From: Entomortierella parvispora E1425
Lineage: Eukaryota; Fungi; Mortierellomycota
DNA length: 64,000 bases
Direction: 5' to 3'
Assembly: GCA_020891255.1 (NCBI GenBank)
Contig: BQFW01000003.1
Coordinates: 434,001-498,000, forward strand
Notes under the pieces: model-generated
The model's input: the letters and a program-made list of their open reading frames with translations, nothing else
Database searches by the model: none
What the model was told of the DNA's origin: nothing
In this document: positions 9,605 through 15,923 of the stretch, piece by piece
Position numbering within the stretch: position 1 is the stretch's first letter
How the letters are laid out: the number at the start of each line of letters is the position of its first letter
Position numbers and translations under genes: made by a program

Positions 9605-10798
9605 ATGTCTCTCTCCCACGGTCAGGAAATCGAGTTCAAGGAGGCTTTCGCCCTCTTCGACCCCACCAACTCCGGTGTCATCCAGCCCAAGGCCTTTGCC
9701 GACTTCCTTGCTGCAAGTAGACCCTCTGCTCGTCATCTCTTCCCCAAACTCTCTTCATTCCTCTACTCTTCAGCGCGAATGCCGTCAATGAGTTTTTGCA
9801 TTCTCTGCTTCAATAAGTTTTCTTTCGACTTTGCCACTCCTGCCTTCTTTCTGCAAACATGAGATTCTGGACCTGTGCCGAGGAGTGTCGAAACCCTGGG
9901 AACTGCTCTTGCTCAGAACTCTGGACTCAACTGAGCAGCCAATGGCTGGATTAAGCTTGATCTTTTTTCGGTTGCAGGCTATTAATGACATTGGATCCAC
10001 TGTCGTCTTGCTCTTTGACATCCTCGTTCGCCTGGAGAGACTCGTATTGTCTATCTGTCTGTTGGCCGATGGACTGGACACAAACTATGATGATAACAAC
10101 AGCAACAGCGTTGATGTTGACGATTGATGCAACAGACACTGCTGGCACAGACGTTTTATTTTTATTTTGGTCCCGCCCTAGAGTCCCTGCTCCGTCCTTT
10201 TTTTTTTTTTACCTTTGTCGATAGTTTTCTATTCCCCACTCCGTCTCCCCCTCTCCTCGGTTTTCATCAAAGAGCAGGTTAATAACCCGGGTAATCGTCA
10301 TTTTTATCATTTATTTCAATAGCTCCTCAACAACCCCGAGTTGACCAACAGTATCAAGCTCCCCACCCAGCCTTTGGACTTCAAGGCCTTCTCTGCCTTG
10401 ATGGCCCGCAACCACAAGGGTGCTGAGACTTCCGATGAGGCCTACGGTGCTCTTTTCCACACCATCAACAAGGATGGTTCCGGCAACGTCTCCTCTGCCG
10501 AGCTCCGTGCCGCTCTCCAGCACTTTGGCAACAACTCTCTCTCCGAGGTAAGAAAAACAAACAGCTGACGGATGCTGTATTGAAATCCAAATTCAATGAT
10601 AGTCGGCGGCGCAATGATCTCTCCAAAACACCAAGCTAAACCCCCCTCCTCTCCTTTTTTTCTCTACCATTCTAGGCTGATGTCGATGAGATCGTCCACG
10701 AGGCCGATGTCTCTGGCGATGGCCGCATTACCCTCGAGGAGTTCTTGAAGATCATGCAGAAGTCTGAGAAGAAGCTCCGTGGCGAGCACGTTCTGTAA
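9605..10798 (+). CDS. Calmodulin-like EF-hand protein of about 151 aa with a degenerate N-lobe
   Basis: Exons 9605-9712, 10323-10547 and 10676-10798. EFKEAFALFDPTNSGVI (EF1-like), shortened EF2 ending LDFKAFSALMARN, NKDGSGNVSSAEL (EF3) and canonical DVSGDGRITLEEF (EF4). Intron 1 needs a GC donor to keep frame. Confidence 0.85.
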
Positions 10799-11080
10799 AT
10801 ACGCCTCTAGTGTTTGCGAAACTCTTAGACTTTTCCCCCTCCTCCAGCAATCTCTTCTAGTTCTCTATATTCCCTCCTTTTCAAACATACATATATAAAC
10901 TCTTGTAATAACTAAACACATCGCGGAAGGTTGGACAGAGAGTGCCGGGAAAGATGGCCTGATAGGGGGAGAAGCGAGGAAGGGAGGGGTCGTGTGTCCC
11001 ATTGATTCTCGGAGAAGCGAGCAAGGTTGCAAACAAACAGGCAGACGAGCCAGGTTCTCTCCCCCACAGTTTTTTTTTGC

Positions 11081-11083
<3 letters not shown>

Positions 11084-11114
<31 letters not shown>
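11084..11114. repeat. (GA)n microsatellite
   Basis: About 15 GA units, read directly. Confidence 0.95.
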
Positions 11115-11121
<7 letters not shown>

Positions 11122-11661
11122 CTGGGCGCACAGAAAGGAACTTATTTTCGACTTCAAATCATGGGCACTGGGGAGAACGATTCGAGGCCAAAAGGAAGAA
11201 AGAAGAAAGCTCTCACGCCCTTTCTCAACTCTATCATTTTAGGCCTTGCTCCACAGTGTTTGTCTGCTCCCTTCCCCGTTTTTTTTACAACCTGTCCAGT
11301 CTATTGTTTGCAACTTTGAAGTGGGGGACTTCTCTAGGCTCGAAACGTGGGGAAGATGGGTGGGAAGGATAGTGAAACGTGATCAGCGAGTTTTCATAGG
11401 AAAGGCGAAGGATATGGTACATTTATCAAGGGACTGGATTGGCCTTTTTGGACATCCTCTATTTCCAATCCCTTCAGGCCTTCCCTACTCTCAAAGGTAC
11501 ATGGCTGATGACTGGCACGCCTATACAATGCCCAACGTACAACAAACTCGTGGTATTTAATTTGGCTATGATCTGCTAGGCAATAAAAATGAGGCCTCTC
11601 AAAATTGAAAGGGTTCGATATTATCCAGCAATCATCCATCGTTGACCCACTTTTTTTTTTA

Positions 11662-12312
11662 TCAGTCAACGTTGACCAGGAAACAAGTCGAGTACTCTTC
11701 TCCCACCGGGTTTTTGTCAAACTGCCACCACCACACCAATTGATACATCCCCGGAAGAGTTCCCTTTGGGATCTTGACCTCGCCATGACACACCGTGTTG
11801 GGGTTCTGAGGGTCCTCACAATTGGCCGGTGTTGCAAAGTTCATCTTGGCCAACAACATCTGTCCGTTCCCAACCGTGTCGCCTCGGTCCGTCAACAAGG
11901 TGTTGGGTCGACCGTTCCAATAGATCTCGACTTGGGAGGGCGCCTGGGCCGCACCACTGACAATCTGATGTTGAGGATCGTCCAAATGACCATTGGCCTC
12001 CCAAGTCAACGTCAGGGTCTGACCAGCCTTGACAGACGCAGGAGGTAAGGCCTGGTTGACATCAAAGTTGTCTTGGCGACCGGGCTGGCAGACGGGGGTA
12101 TTGTTTTGGCGGCCGCTAATGAGATATGTGTAGAGGGTGTTGATGTCGGGGTTGGCCCGGGTGGGATACCCAGTTCCGTAACCACTGCATTGAGTCGACG
12201 AGATGGTGTTGCTGCAGTCCAACCAGGAATGGGCTGCGACACCAGAAAAAAGGACGGATTCTTGACTGAGGACGACGACAGAGGCCAAGGCGAGGATATG
12301 GACAGCCTTCAT
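11662..12312 (-). CDS. Secreted 216-aa protein with predicted mature N-terminal His; LPMO-like copper-protein candidate
   Basis: Single exon from ATG 12312. Hydrophobic signal peptide ends VAA|HSWLDC; second His in WEANGH; C-terminal IPKGTLPGMYQLVWWW and GEEYSTCF; six Cys in the mature chain. Confidence 0.85.
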   Translation of the reverse strand: MKAVHILALASVVVLSQESVLFSGVAAHSWLDCSNTISSTQCSGYGTGYPTRANPDINTLYTYLISGRQNNTPVCQPGRQDNFDVNQALPPASVKAGQTLTLTWEANGHLDDPQHQIVSGAAQAPSQVEIYWNGRPNTLLTDRGDTVGNGQMLLAKMNFATPANCEDPQNPNTVCHGEVKIPKGTLPGMYQLVWWWQFDKNPVGEEYSTCFLVNVD

Positions 12313-13205
12313 TCTGAGAGAAAAGTGAGTGAGAGTAGAAATAAGGTGAAGTAATGGATTGGTACCAGAGGTTACGACAGATTTGAATAGAAAATGGAAA
12401 GAGGAATGAGGAAAGAAGAGAGAAAAGTCTGAAAGTTGGTGGATATTGGAGGGAAAAAGGCGCGTCCTTTTATGGAGGCGAGAGAACAGCAGAACAAAGC
12501 AGGGGATGCCATTCACAAAAGGGGTGTGAAGACTTAGCTGTTTCATGGCTGGACAAAGAACCCGCGACTCTGGAGAAGGAGATAGATAGGAAAGTAGGTA
12601 AGGAGAGGGAAATGAGTGGGATAGAAGGAACGCTGGGAGAGATGACTAGACAGGGGGGCAATTTACGCGTGCTTCTTCAACGAACCCCATGCAGGGGGAC
12701 GAGGGTGGGGCCGTGCGGCCATGTAAAGTATTTAAGGGGCGGCAGTTGTTTTGTTCAGCATCGATCTGGCAATGCGTGAGGTGAGCAGCAGAGGAAGGAC
12801 CCTGTTGCCAAGACTTGCGAATGACGCCAAGGGGATAACGAACGAGCCTTGGGTGCCGCCAGAGAAGGAAGCCCGTCTTGTGGACGGAGGCTGTGGTGGC
12901 GCGGCAGAGGGTCCCGCGAGTCCGCGAGTCCGAGACAGACGGGCCAGTCAGAGTGGACTCAAGGAAAAAAAAGCCCAGAGTCGTGTTTGCGCAGGGAAGC
13001 GACACAAAAGAGGTTCCTTTCTGCCACCAATTTCTTCGTCATACTAGGCGTTTCTTTTCGACTCTTCTTCTTCTTCGTCTTCTCATCTCCACAATTGTTC
13101 TCTCTTCTTTCCTCATCTCATCCCTCCCCCCTTCGCACGCCTGACCCAAGCCTGCTCTAATCAAGTCTATAAATTCAAGTCTGCTCTGTTCGTGCATTTC
13201 AGCAA

Positions 13206-15923
13206 ATGGTTGTCATCAACTCGGCCCTCCTCGCCAAAAAGTTTCCTCAGTTGCCAGTCAACGACGTCGACCAACTCGTGAACCAGTTCCGGTAAGAAGT
13301 GCAAGCCGAGAAAAGAACCCACTCCTTGTTCCTAGCTTGAGATCAGAGGCGTCATTCCTCTTTGCCTCGAGACTGACCCCTTGTTTGTTCAACGATTCAT
13401 AGTCGATTCGACATCGATGGACGCGGCCAAATCGACCAAAAGGACCTCGTCAAGGTCATTCAAGACATTGGCGAGGGTCAGTCCTACGACCAGATTCGCT
13501 CTACCATTAAGGCTGTCGATATCAATGCCACCGGAAAGGTTGAGGTGGATGAGTTTCTGGAGGTAACGACTGGAGCCTTCTTTACTGTTCGCGTGCAACT
13601 TTTTCATCATCTCGTGCGCGTGGTCAGACCACAACTGACCTTGCGTGGGCATCTCCTTTTTTCGCTACTGTTTGGGTTGCTGACTCTCCCGCTCTTTTTT
13701 TTTCTTTTTTTTTCTTATCTTGACAGATTATCTCAAAGTTGCGTGAGGGAGGTGCAAGCCAACACACTGCTGGCAAGAAGGTGATCCAGGTCAAGGGAGC
13801 CAACAACAACATTACGCACTCGATGAACGATGACGAGCGTTCCGAGTTTACTGCACATATCAACTCTGTCCTCGCTGGTGACTTGCATATTGGAGACAGG
13901 ATCCCTATTCCCACGCACACCATGCAGATCTTTGACGAGTGTAGAGGTAAGAAAAAATCACCCAGAAAGCTTTCCTTTTTTTTTGCCATTCGTCATCAAG
14001 AAATTATGAGAGAGGGATAAACCTTTTTCGCGGCTGGAACAGATAACTGTTCTGGAAAACGAAAAGGAATTATAGCAGTGACGCGGATTGTTCAATTGCA
14101 CGGTATCCTAATCAAACTCGTTCTACAACGATCTTTGTTGGATATAGATGGTCTCTTGCTCTGCAAATTGATCAATGACTCAGTACCAGATACTATTGAT
14201 GAACGTGTGTTGAACGTCAAGAACAAGCTGTCCAACTTCCAGATCATCGAGAACAACAATGTGGCCATCAACTCTGCCAAGGCTATTGGATGCAGTGTCG
14301 TCAACATTGGACCTCAGGATATTATGGACGGACGTGAGCACTTGATTTTGGGACTCATCTGGCAAATCATCAAAGCTGGTCTCTTGTCCAAGATTGATAT
14401 CCGCCTCCACCCCGAACTCTACCGCCTCTTGGAAGAGGACGAGTCACTTGAGAAGTTCCTTCGCCTTCCCCCAGAGCAGATTTTGTTGAGATGGTTCAAC
14501 TACCACCTGAAGGCTGCAGGATGGCACAGAACGTAAGTTTTAACTTCTTGTTTGACTGCTTGCTCGGAAATAGATTCTTTTGATTGTTTGTTTGCCGGCT
14601 CTTTTGTCAAAAATGAAGTCCAGAGCGAACAGCACGGCGGGAAAATCACAGAAAACCACAGAAACGCTCGCTGAAATGCTCACTGGCATTGCAAAGAAAA
14701 TTGCGAAAGGTGTCTAGTTGCTAACACTGACTATTTTGTACGTGCTCTCAGTGTGAACAACTTTAGTTCAGATGTCAAGGATGGCGAGAACTACACTATT
14801 CTCCTCAACCAATTGGCCCCAGATCTTTGCTCCAAGGCCCCTCTCCGCGAGAACGATCTCTTTTCCCGTGCCGAACAGATTCTCCAGAACGCCGAAAAAC
14901 TCAACTGCCGCAAGTACCTTTCCCCTCAGTCGCTCGTTGCAGGAAACCCCAAGCTCAACCTTGCCTTCGTTGCCAACTTGTTCAACACCCACCCTGGTCT
15001 CGATCCTTTGGAGGAGGTCGAGCGTCCAGAATTGCCCGATGTCGAAGGAGATCGCGAGGCTCGAGGTAAAGCGAGAATCATGTTTTAGCAATGGCGTGTT
15101 GTGGAGTACACAGTTTTCTAATGTTCTCATTGTTCTTTGAGAAATCTAGTCTTTGCCTTGTGGCTCAACAGTTTAGATGTCGATCCTTTCGTCAACAACT
15201 TGTACACTGATCTTCAGGACGGAGTCATCCTTTTGCAGGCCTTTGACAAGATGCACCCCGGTATCGTGGACTGGAAGCGTGCCACTCGCAAGCAGCCCCT
15301 GAACCGCTTCAAGGCGGTCGAGAACACCAACTACGCTATTATGATCGGACAGCATCTCCGTTACACTCTTGTCAACATGCAGGGAGCCGATATCGTCGAC
15401 GGAAGCCCAACCCTTACCCTTGGTTTGGTTTGGCAGATGATGCGTGAGAACGTAACACAGACCATGAAGAAGCTTTCAAAATCAGGTCGCGATATCACCG
15501 ACATGGAGATGATTCGCTGGGCCAACGAGACTGTGCAGCGTGGAGGAAAGACGAGCAAGGTTGGAAGCTTCAAGGATCCTTCTTTCAGGACCGGTGTCTT
15601 TGTGTGCGATGTCTTGAACGGAGTTCGCCCTGGATGCGTCGACTATGCTATGGTCAACAGAGGCTCTACTTTGGAGGATGCCAAGATGAACGCCAAGTAT
15701 GCCATTTCCGTGGCAAGAAAGATTGGTGCTGTCATTTTTGTTCTCCCCGAAGATATCATCGAGTGCCGCGCCAAGCTTGTAAGTTTGTTTTCTTTTGCCC
15801 ATGAACTACCGTTTAATCATTCAAAGCGATCGGCAGCTCATACTCACCCACCATGTCTTTTTTCTCTAGATTCTCACTTTTATTGGATCGCTTATGGCTA
15901 TCGACACTGCTGGAAAGGCTTAA
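13206..15923 (+). CDS. SAC6: Fimbrin/plastin actin-bundling protein
   Basis: Seven exons (13206-13291, 13403-13562, 13727-13946, 14148-14532, 14752-15065, 15150-15778, 15870-15923). N-terminal EF-hands, then four CH domains with DGLLLCKLINDSVPDTIDER, LILGLIWQII, PEQILLRWFNYHL, LTLGLVWQMMR and YAISVARKIGA. Confidence 0.96.

What the first reader, a model, noticed from the sequence alone, without database searches (positions are those of the whole stretch)
11662..12312. Candidate unclassified lytic polysaccharide monooxygenase-like copper protein (HSW-type His1)
Seen: a 27-aa signal peptide places His at mature position 1 (HSWLDC), with a second His at about mature 82 (WEANGH), a strand IP...PGxYxLxWxW, a terminal E-x-Y-x-x-C motif (GEEYSTC, Tyr about 180) and six Cys. 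Established: LPMOs bind Cu with His1 plus a second His and an axial Tyr/Phe; AA11 and AA15 end in E-x-Y/F-x-x-C motifs. The families I know (AA9-11, AA13-17, X325) do not typically begin HSW. Inference: a divergent or new LPMO-fold family acting on chitin or another wall polymer, or a Cu-binding protein like X325/Bim1.
Basis: partly seen in the sequence, partly recalled or inferred. Interest (0 to 1): 0.72.

Follow-up and report, generated by a model that had tools for sequence, protein, structure and literature searches.

The report
Uncharacterised LPMO-like copper protein (DUF7492)
This soil-fungus gene encodes a small secreted protein with the fold and conserved copper-holding residues of the enzymes that cut chitin and cellulose by oxidation, but it belongs to a large family (Pfam DUF7492, in fungi and oomycetes) for which I found no published test.

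Summary
Window 11662-12312 (minus strand) is an intronless 216-codon gene of Entomortierella parvispora. It has a 27-residue signal peptide, then HSWLDC, a second His at mature position 82, GEEYSTC with Tyr180, and six Cys.

The protein belongs to Pfam DUF7492 (52 bits, cut-off 27). An exhaustive profile search found 762 cluster representatives. Those I could name are fungi (Mortierellomycota, Kickxellomycotina, Allomyces, a chytrid, Saitoella, Lipomyces) and oomycetes. In 178 fetched proteins, His1 is kept in 146 of 148, His82 in 173 of 174 and Tyr180 in 158 of 165.

A model of the mature domain (pLDDT 94) matches only LPMOs at the top of an unfiltered PDB scan. Z is 9-11.6 for AA10, AA15, AA13, AA11 and AA9, all tied, with residue 1 laid on their His1. 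By sequence only AA11 structures are reached (E 4e-6), and only over the last 50 residues. There Glu178 and Tyr180 align with Glu139 and Tyr141 of AfAA11B.

Best reading: a secreted histidine-brace copper protein of an unclassified LPMO family close to AA11, probably an oxidative polysaccharide enzyme. Substrate and activity are untested. A copper-handling role like Bim1 remains possible. No paper names the family. The scan noted HSW-type proteins elsewhere in this genome (s1-185110).

The parts
11662..12312 (-). Complete intronless coding sequence: 216 codons plus stop at 11662-11664. Pfam DUF7492 member.
   Evidence: Identical to the called gene in GCA_020891255.1 BQFW01000003.1.
12232..12312 (-). 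Signal peptide, residues 1-27 (MKAVHILALASVVVLSQESVLFSGVAA). Predicted cleavage after Ala27.
   Evidence: Hydrophobic core and V-x-A at -3/-1. The same arrangement occurs in 128 of 134 homologues.
12229..12231 (-). His28, which is His1 of the mature protein: the proposed N-terminal ligand of the histidine brace.
   Evidence: Codon read. His in 146 of 148 homologues. Model residue 1 is laid on the N-terminal His of solved LPMOs.
11665..12231 (-). Mature LPMO-fold domain, 189 residues, with no C-terminal extension, CBM or GPI signal.
   Evidence: AlphaFold2 model with pLDDT 94 and pTM 0.91. Z is 9-11.6 to AA10, AA15, AA13, AA11 and AA9. The C-terminus ends at the last strand.
11986..11988 (-). 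His109 (mature His82, in the N-G-H motif): the proposed second ligand of the histidine brace.
   Evidence: His in 173 of 174 homologues. The other two His of the mature protein, 88 and 149, are not conserved.
11683..11700 (-). E-E-Y-S-T-C motif. Glu205 (mature 178) is the proposed second-sphere residue, Tyr207 (mature 180) the axial residue, and Cys210 (mature 183) is disulfide-linked.
   Evidence: These align with Glu139, Tyr141 and Cys144 of AfAA11B (9exj) and with Tyr140 of AoAA11 (4mah). The roles of those AA11 residues are described in PMC12186267. Tyr is kept in 158 of 165 and Glu in 119 of about 160 homologues.

Best explanation
The gene encodes a secreted mono-copper protein of the LPMO fold. 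It belongs to the uncharacterised family Pfam DUF7492, whose nearest characterised relatives are the chitin-active AA11 LPMOs. Proposed mechanism (inferred): signal peptidase cuts after Ala27, so that His28 becomes residue 1. Its free amino group and imidazole, together with the imidazole of His82, hold one Cu ion in a histidine brace. Tyr180 sits in the axial position, and Glu178 in the second sphere positions H2O2 or O2, as in AA11. After reduction to Cu(I) by an external reductant, the enzyme oxidises a C-H next to a glycosidic bond in a wall-type polysaccharide or its soluble oligomers. My best single guess for the substrate is chitin or chito-oligosaccharides. Three disulfides (6-15, 48-183, 138-148) stabilise the domain. 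Shown here: the gene, the family, the fold, and conservation of His1, His82, Tyr180 and Glu178. Inferred: cleavage site, copper binding, catalysis and substrate.
For: Pfam DUF7492 at E 7.5e-14, 52 bits against a cut-off of 27. 132 of 135 family domains match it. There are 762 representatives at E<=1e-3 in the exhaustive profile search. His1 is kept in 146/148, His82 in 173/174 and Tyr180 in 158/165 (plus 4 Phe); Glu178 is kept in 119, with 12 Gln. The His directly follows a signal-peptide-like segment across the family. The model has pLDDT 94. In the unfiltered scan of 48,161 PDB chains, ranks 1-25 are all LPMO or LPMO-like proteins, and unrelated beta-sandwiches start at Z 6.5. Model residue 1 aligns to the N-terminal His of these chains. 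The profile hits the AA11 structures 9exj, 4mah and 7p3u at E 4e-6 to 6e-5, aligning W-x-W and E-x-Y-x-x-C. PMC12186267 describes Glu139 and Tyr141 as the AA11 active-site pair and calls the Tyr plus Glu combination unique to AA11. Cys co-occurrence gives three consistent pairs.
Against: There is no biochemical evidence for any member of the family. I found no paper on it. Some LPMO-fold families with an intact histidine brace do not cleave polysaccharides (X325/Bim1, some AA16). Glu178 is Ala in 18 of the 178 fetched proteins. The family occurs in yeasts (Lipomyces) and in obligate biotrophic oomycetes, which fits a housekeeping role as well as a degradative one. This protein has no carbohydrate-binding module. 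The distances between His1, His82 and Tyr180 in the model could not be measured.
Confidence: 0.55

Rival explanations
1. It is a non-catalytic copper-binding or copper-acquisition protein of the LPMO fold, working like X325/Bim1. The histidine brace captures Cu at the cell surface or in the medium and hands it on, without cleaving any polysaccharide.
For: LaX325 (6ibh) is matched at Z 8.8. Atlas clusters with the BIM1-like domain are matched at TM 0.56-0.58. The family occurs in Lipomyces yeasts and obligate biotrophs. There is no CBM. A review notes that a histidine brace does not predict polysaccharide activity.
Against: There is no Pfam BIM1-like (PF20238) match even at E<=10. X325 scores lower than AA10, AA15, AA11 and AA13. 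This protein ends at the last strand, with no Ser/Thr-rich linker or hydrophobic GPI signal. The conserved Glu-x-Tyr pair aligns with the catalytic second sphere of AA11.
Confidence: 0.2
2. It is an LPMO-fold oxidase that mainly makes H2O2 or acts as a redox helper for other enzymes, as reported for some AA16 proteins. It would not cleave glycosidic bonds itself.
For: The paper list includes a study in which AA16 oxidoreductases boost AA9 LPMOs (PMC10088020; title and abstract start only). The AA16 structure 7ze9 is a weak sequence match (E 0.14) and a structural match (Z 7.9).
Against: AA16 is among the more distant LPMO matches. The active-site motif aligns best with AA11, which is catalytically active on chitin or chito-oligomers.
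Confidence: 0.12
3. It is simply a very divergent AA11, and curators would place it in that existing CAZy family, which would remove the novelty of the family.
For: AA11 structures are the only solved proteins reached by sequence (E 4e-6). The Tyr plus Glu arrangement is shared.
Against: The similarity covers only about 50 of 189 residues, at 30 bits. Even the weakest of the 150 listed family members score 70 bits or more, most of them over nearly the full profile. Structural Z to AA11 (10.3-10.4) is no higher than to AA10, AA15 or AA13. Pfam keeps it as a separate family, and no source names any member AA11.
Confidence: 0.1

Closest known systems
AA11 lytic polysaccharide monooxygenases (AoAA11 4mah/4mai, AfAA11B 9exj/9hdg, AfAA11A 7p3u)
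   Same: Both are secreted fungal proteins with the LPMO beta-sandwich fold and an N-terminal His. The C-terminal strand pair carries the same motifs (P-G-x-Y-x-L-x-W-x-W and E-x-Y-x-x-C). Glu178 and Tyr180 align with Glu139 and Tyr141.
   Different: There is no detectable sequence similarity over the first 135 or so residues. The second His is at 82 rather than about 60. The N-terminus is H-S/T-W-x-D-C, followed by a Cys6-Cys15 loop. Structural Z is not higher than to other LPMO families. The family also occurs in oomycetes.
AA10 LPMOs (Pfam LPMO_10; e.g. ScLPMO10C 4oy7, CBP21 2bem)
   Same: These give the best structural scores (Z 11.6, rmsd 3.4 A over 151 residues; TM about 0.6 to Atlas AA10 clusters). 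UniProt automatically names some family members 'Chitin-binding type-4 domain-containing protein'.
   Different: This protein has no LPMO_10 Pfam match, and only 7 of 135 family members have weak ones. Identity is 13-15%. The AA10s compared in PMC12186267 have an axial Phe with Glu, where this protein has Tyr with Glu.
X325 / Bim1-like copper proteins (LaX325 6ibh; Pfam BIM1-like_dom)
   Same: They share the LPMO-type fold with an N-terminal His brace, have no CBM, and occur in non-degrading yeasts.
   Different: Z is lower (8.8) and there is no Pfam match. This protein has no GPI signal. The extra Asp ligand could not be assessed.
Pfam DUF7492 (PF24320)
   Same: This protein is a member: 52 bits against a cut-off of 27.
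   Different: The Pfam entry carries no function. Its 265-position profile is matched only in two stretches by this compact Mortierellaceae form.

Membership tests
Pfam DUF7492 (PF24320) | Score above the curated gathering threshold | tested here: met
   E 7.5e-14, 52 bits against 27. 132 of 135 homologous domains also match.
LPMO superfamily (histidine-brace copper enzymes) | His as the first residue of the mature protein, directly after the signal peptide | tested here: met
   V-A-A|H-S-W in this protein. The same arrangement occurs in 128 of 134 homologues, with a small residue at -1 in 133 of 134. No SignalP or N-terminal sequencing was available.
LPMO superfamily (histidine-brace copper enzymes) | A conserved second His and an axial Tyr or Phe | tested here: met
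   His82 is kept in 173/174 and Tyr180 in 158/165 plus 4 Phe. Tyr180 aligns to the axial Tyr of AA11.
LPMO superfamily (histidine-brace copper enzymes) | Immunoglobulin/Fn3-like beta-sandwich fold superposable on solved LPMOs from residue 1 | tested here: met
   The model has pLDDT 94. The top 25 of 48,161 chains are all LPMO or LPMO-like, with Z up to 11.6, and unrelated folds score 6.5 or less.
LPMO superfamily (histidine-brace copper enzymes) | The three active-site residues cluster on a flat surface | not testable with these tools
   Model coordinates are not exposed, and only alignment ranges are returned.
LPMO superfamily (histidine-brace copper enzymes) | Copper binding and oxidative cleavage of a polysaccharide | not testable with these tools
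   This needs recombinant protein, EPR or ICP-MS, and product analysis.
AA11 | Significant sequence similarity to characterised AA11 over the catalytic module | tested here: not met
   The family profile reaches 9exj, 4mah and 7p3u only over profile positions 137-188, at 30 bits and E 4e-6. The single sequence gives E 0.16. The dbCAN AA11 HMM was not available.
AA11 | Axial Tyr combined with a second-sphere Glu (E-x-Y) | tested here: met
   Glu178 and Tyr180 align to Glu139 and Tyr141 of AfAA11B (PMC12186267).
AA10 (Pfam LPMO_10, PF03067) | Match to the family profile | tested here: not met
   No hit at E<=10 for this protein. 7 of 135 relatives have weak hits, best E 5e-4.
AA9 (Pfam PF03443) | Match to the family profile | tested here: not met
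   No hit for this protein. 5 of 135 relatives have weak hits. PDB AA9 chains score E 0.2 or worse.
AA13, AA14, AA15, AA16, AA17 (solved representatives) | Sequence similarity to a solved member | tested here: not met
   In the profile search of all PDB sequences at E<=10, AA16 7ze9 scores 0.14 and AA15 5msz scores 0.27. AA13, AA14 and AA17 are not listed. Structural Z is 10.3 for AA13, 10.8 for AA15, 7.9 for AA16 and 7.3 for AA14.
X325 / BIM1-like | Match to PF20238, and a C-terminal GPI-anchor signal | tested here: not met
   No Pfam hit. The sequence ends ...CFLVNVD with no linker or hydrophobic tail. The Asp ligand could not be tested.

The most novel reading that the evidence does not exclude
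DUF7492 is a catalytically active LPMO family of its own, a sister of AA11. Its substrate would not be one of the classical ones. It could be a wall polymer shared by fungi and oomycetes, such as beta-1,3-glucan, or the organism's own wall during growth. That would explain the family's presence in yeasts, zygomycete-grade fungi, chytrids and biotrophic oomycetes alike.
Probability: 0.15. Interest if true: 0.85.

Novelty: new variant of a known kind. Interest (0 to 1): 0.6.

Why it matters
LPMO families have repeatedly changed views of how organisms attack or remodel recalcitrant polysaccharides, and each new family (AA13 to AA17) brought a new substrate or a new biological role. DUF7492 has hundreds of sequence clusters across early-diverging fungi, some Ascomycota yeasts and oomycete plant and animal pathogens. 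It keeps an AA11-type Tyr/Glu copper site, and I found no published characterisation. If it is active, it would add a family to the oxidative CAZyme repertoire. It would also give a handle on wall remodelling or copper handling in groups where classical LPMOs are scarce, such as Mortierellomycota and Kickxellomycotina. If it only binds copper, it would be a second Bim1-like system. For this one gene the result is more modest: it is one of several paralogues in this genome.

Tried and rejected
1. The first AlphaFold2 run used the full precursor and a 15-sequence alignment. It gave pLDDT 72.5 with residues 22-59 unresolved. I replaced it with a mature-domain model built on 135 sequences.
2. NCBIfam gave no family, as expected for a eukaryotic protein.
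3. Literature searches for DUF7492, PF24320, six locus tags of family members and a possible family AA19 all came back empty. AA18 is cited to Santos et al. 2025, and the review describes the metagenomic cellulose enzyme CelOCE as a newly reported one. Linking the two is my own knowledge. I treat AA18 as unrelated.
4. PxLPMO1 of Podosphaera was considered as a described relative. I rejected it because it has His1 and His52 and models on X325.
5. I looked for a tandem paralogue or other copy in the window and found none.
6. Genomic context gave nothing. The neighbours are a fimbrin-like gene (EF-hand plus CH domains) and an EF-hand protein gene, with no functional link.
8. A profile-profile comparison with an AA11 alignment was not possible, because no tool returned full AA11 sequences and I did not type any from memory.
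9. Fusions of the domain with TGT, PPR or Tos1 domains in some gene models were judged to be probable merged gene models, not real architectures.

Full report
**1. The observation**

The minus strand of window 11662-12312 carries an uninterrupted ORF of 216 codons. A longer ORF reaches an upstream ATG at 12546. However, the 216-residue form is the deposited gene model, and it matches the length and N-termini of homologues.

- The first 27 residues are a typical signal peptide, with a hydrophobic core and V-A-A at positions -3 to -1. The next residues are HSWLDC.
- The four key codons were read by hand: His28 at 12229-12231, His109 (mature 82) at 11986-11988, Glu205 at 11698-11700 and Tyr207 (mature 180) at 11692-11694.
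- The mature protein has six Cys, and its only His residues are 1, 82, 88 and 149.

**2. Organism and context**

The gene lies on BQFW01000003.1 of assembly GCA_020891255.1. A 50%-identical paralogue, named EMPS_01789 of Entomortierella parvispora, lies on another contig of the same assembly. The window is therefore from E. parvispora (Mortierellomycota).

The neighbours are a fimbrin-like gene (EF-hand plus CH domains) and a small EF-hand protein gene, which tell us nothing about function. There is no second copy in the window.

**3. Family**

- Pfam places the protein in DUF7492 (PF24320) at E 7.5e-14, 52 bits against a cut-off of 27.
- The word-based search found 32 relatives, nearly all Mortierellomycota.
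- The exhaustive profile search of 1.84 billion cluster representatives found 762 at E<=1e-3 and 250 at E<=1e-10.
- Named members come from Kickxellomycotina (Spiromyces, Dimargaris, Ramicandelaber), Allomyces, the chytrid Quaeritorhiza, Saitoella and Lipomyces yeasts.
- Named members also come from oomycetes: Phytophthora, Nothophytophthora, Albugo, Saprolegnia, Hyaloperonospora, Peronosclerospora and Pythium.
- Sources call them 'hypothetical protein', 'DUF7492 domain-containing protein' or, by automatic transfer, 'Chitin-binding type-4 domain-containing protein'. None calls them AA11.
- Long members carry C-terminal extensions with no Pfam domain. A few fusions to TGT, PPR or Tos1 domains place the His internally and look like merged gene models.

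**4. Conservation**

All 178 fetched proteins were aligned to the family profile without any filtering.

| Position (mature numbering) | Conservation |
|---|---|
| His1 | 146 of 148 with a residue there |
| Ser/Thr2 | 144 of 148 |
| Trp3 | 138 of 148 |
| His82 | 173 of 174 |
| Tyr180 | 158 of 165, plus 4 Phe |
| Glu178 | 119, plus 12 Gln and 18 Ala |
| Cys183 | 159 |

- His88 and His149 are not conserved.
- In 134 homologues with a Met start, the presequence has a median length of 22 residues. Position -1 is A, G, S, T or C in 133 of them, position -3 is small or aliphatic in all, and 129 have a strongly hydrophobic stretch. The N-terminal His after signal-peptide cleavage is therefore a family property, not an accident of this gene.
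- Alignment A2 shows His1 and His82 as invariant, but I selected its rows for those residues, so the unfiltered counts above are the ones to quote.
- Presence and absence of Cys across A2 pairs them as 6-15 (absent together in 24 sequences), 48-183 and 138-148. This predicts three disulfides.

**5. Fold**

- The precursor with a shallow alignment gave a mediocre model (pLDDT 72.5).
- The mature domain with 135 diverse sequences gave pLDDT 94.0 and pTM 0.91.
- Foldseek against the PDB returns LPMOs of AA10, AA9 and AA11 in nearly all of its top 50 rows, with TM about 0.4-0.54.
- VIA-align gives Z 11.6 (rmsd 3.4 A, 151 residues) for ScLPMO10C. It gives 10.8 for AA15, 10.3-10.4 for AA11, 10.3 for AA13 and about 9-10 for AA9. 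These are all ties.
- The unfiltered scan of 48,161 chains puts only LPMO or LPMO-like proteins in ranks 1-25, including X325 at 8.8, AA16 at 7.9 and AA14 at 7.3. Generic beta-sandwiches follow at Z 6.5 or less.
- In these alignments model residue 1 pairs with the first residue of the mature chains. By my knowledge of those entries, that residue is their N-terminal His: residue 1 of 4mah, 5msz and 4opb, His35 of 4oy7 and His28 of 2bem.
- Atlas clusters of DUF7492 match at TM 0.76-0.79, bacterial AA10 clusters at about 0.62 and BIM1-like clusters at 0.56-0.58.

The fold is LPMO, and the family sits about as far from each named family as those families sit from one another.

**6. Link to AA11**

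By sequence, the single protein reaches only AoAA11 (E 0.16). The 135-sequence profile reaches AfAA11B (9exj, E 4e-6), AoAA11 (4mah, 5e-6) and AfAA11A (7p3u, 6e-5). In every case the match covers only profile positions about 137-188.

The aligned block is I-P-x-G-x-x-P-G-x-Y-x-L-x-W-x-W ... E-x-Y-x-x-C. Counting along the printed alignment:
- Glu178 pairs with Glu139 of AfAA11B.
- Tyr180 pairs with Tyr141 of AfAA11B (Tyr140 in AoAA11).
- Cys183 pairs with Cys144.

PMC12186267 states that AfAA11B binds copper with His1 and His61 and has Tyr141 axial. It also states that Glu139 is crucial for productive use of H2O2, and that Tyr plus Glu is a combination unique to AA11. The CWR-1 study shows that mutating either His or the Tyr of an AA11 abolishes chitin oxidation (PMC9550227). 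DUF7492 therefore shares what that paper treats as the AA11 signature in the second sphere. It lacks detectable similarity to AA11 in the first two thirds of the domain, and its second His lies about 20 residues further along.

**7. Interpretation**

- Shown here: a real secreted-protein gene, membership of DUF7492, the LPMO fold, and family-wide conservation of the three copper-site residues and of the Glu.
- Inferred: cleavage at Ala27|His28, Cu binding in a histidine brace, peroxygenase or monooxygenase chemistry, and a polysaccharide substrate.
- I favour an active enzyme (about 0.55). The conserved Glu-x-Tyr pair is a catalytic feature rather than a metal-binding one. The structure also scores higher against catalytic families than against X325.
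- Chitin or chito-oligomers is the best single guess for the substrate because AA11 is the nearest relative, but the support is weak. The family also occurs in oomycetes, whose walls are mainly glucan (my own knowledge), and in yeasts.

Rivals:
- A Bim1/X325-like copper-handling protein (0.2).
- An AA16-like H2O2-producing helper (0.12).
- On classification only, a very divergent AA11 (0.1).

**8. Novelty**

Pfam already delimits the family, and UniProt's automatic names hint at LPMO likeness, so the family itself is not a new discovery. I found no paper that names DUF7492, PF24320 or six member locus tags. The LPMO reviews I searched list AA9-11 and AA13-18 only. The library does not cover most subscription journals, and CAZy's internal unclassified families could not be consulted.

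The scan's own notes show that HSW-type LPMO-like genes were flagged elsewhere in this genome (s1-185110), along with other unclassified His1 proteins. Those notes agree with this report but are not independent evidence, and I did not verify that their proteins belong to DUF7492.

**9. Limits**

- There was no SignalP, no dbCAN and no access to model coordinates.

Noticed in passing
window about 11040-11100: There is a (GA)n/(CT)n microsatellite in the intergenic region between the EF-hand gene and the LPMO-like gene. It shows up as SLSLSL and RERERE runs in the mechanical ORFs.
   Followed up: no
window about 9605-10798 (+) and 13206-15312 (+): The flanking genes are an intron-containing 151-aa EF-hand protein gene and a fimbrin/plastin-like gene (EF-hand plus two CH domains). 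Coordinates were converted from locus L001.
   Followed up: partly
L002:5001-5657 (GCA_020891255.1 BQFW01000002.1): This is a 218-aa paralogue (EMPS_01789, 50% identical) of the same family in the same genome. It is flanked by two genes of 560 and 593 aa that have no Pfam family.
   Followed up: partly
family-wide (P0078, P0094, P0146, P0158, P0205-P0208): DUF7492 is shared by fungi and oomycetes (Phytophthora, Albugo, Saprolegnia, Pythium, downy mildews). The oomycete members share an H-S/T-W-I-D-C-I/L/F-D start. Whether this reflects ancient origin or fungus-to-oomycete transfer was not examined.
   Followed up: no
P0070, P0091, P0146, P0134: Some gene models join a DUF7492 domain to TGT, PPR, Tos1 cell-wall or WW domains, and in the two that could be checked (P0091, P0134) the conserved His lies far from the N-terminus only in P0091. 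These are probably merged neighbouring genes. The Tos1 neighbour in Pythium might hint at a cell-wall locus.
   Followed up: no
window 11641-11661: A run of ten T on the plus strand (A on the coding strand) lies immediately after the stop codon. It may belong to the 3' end or polyadenylation region.
   Followed up: no
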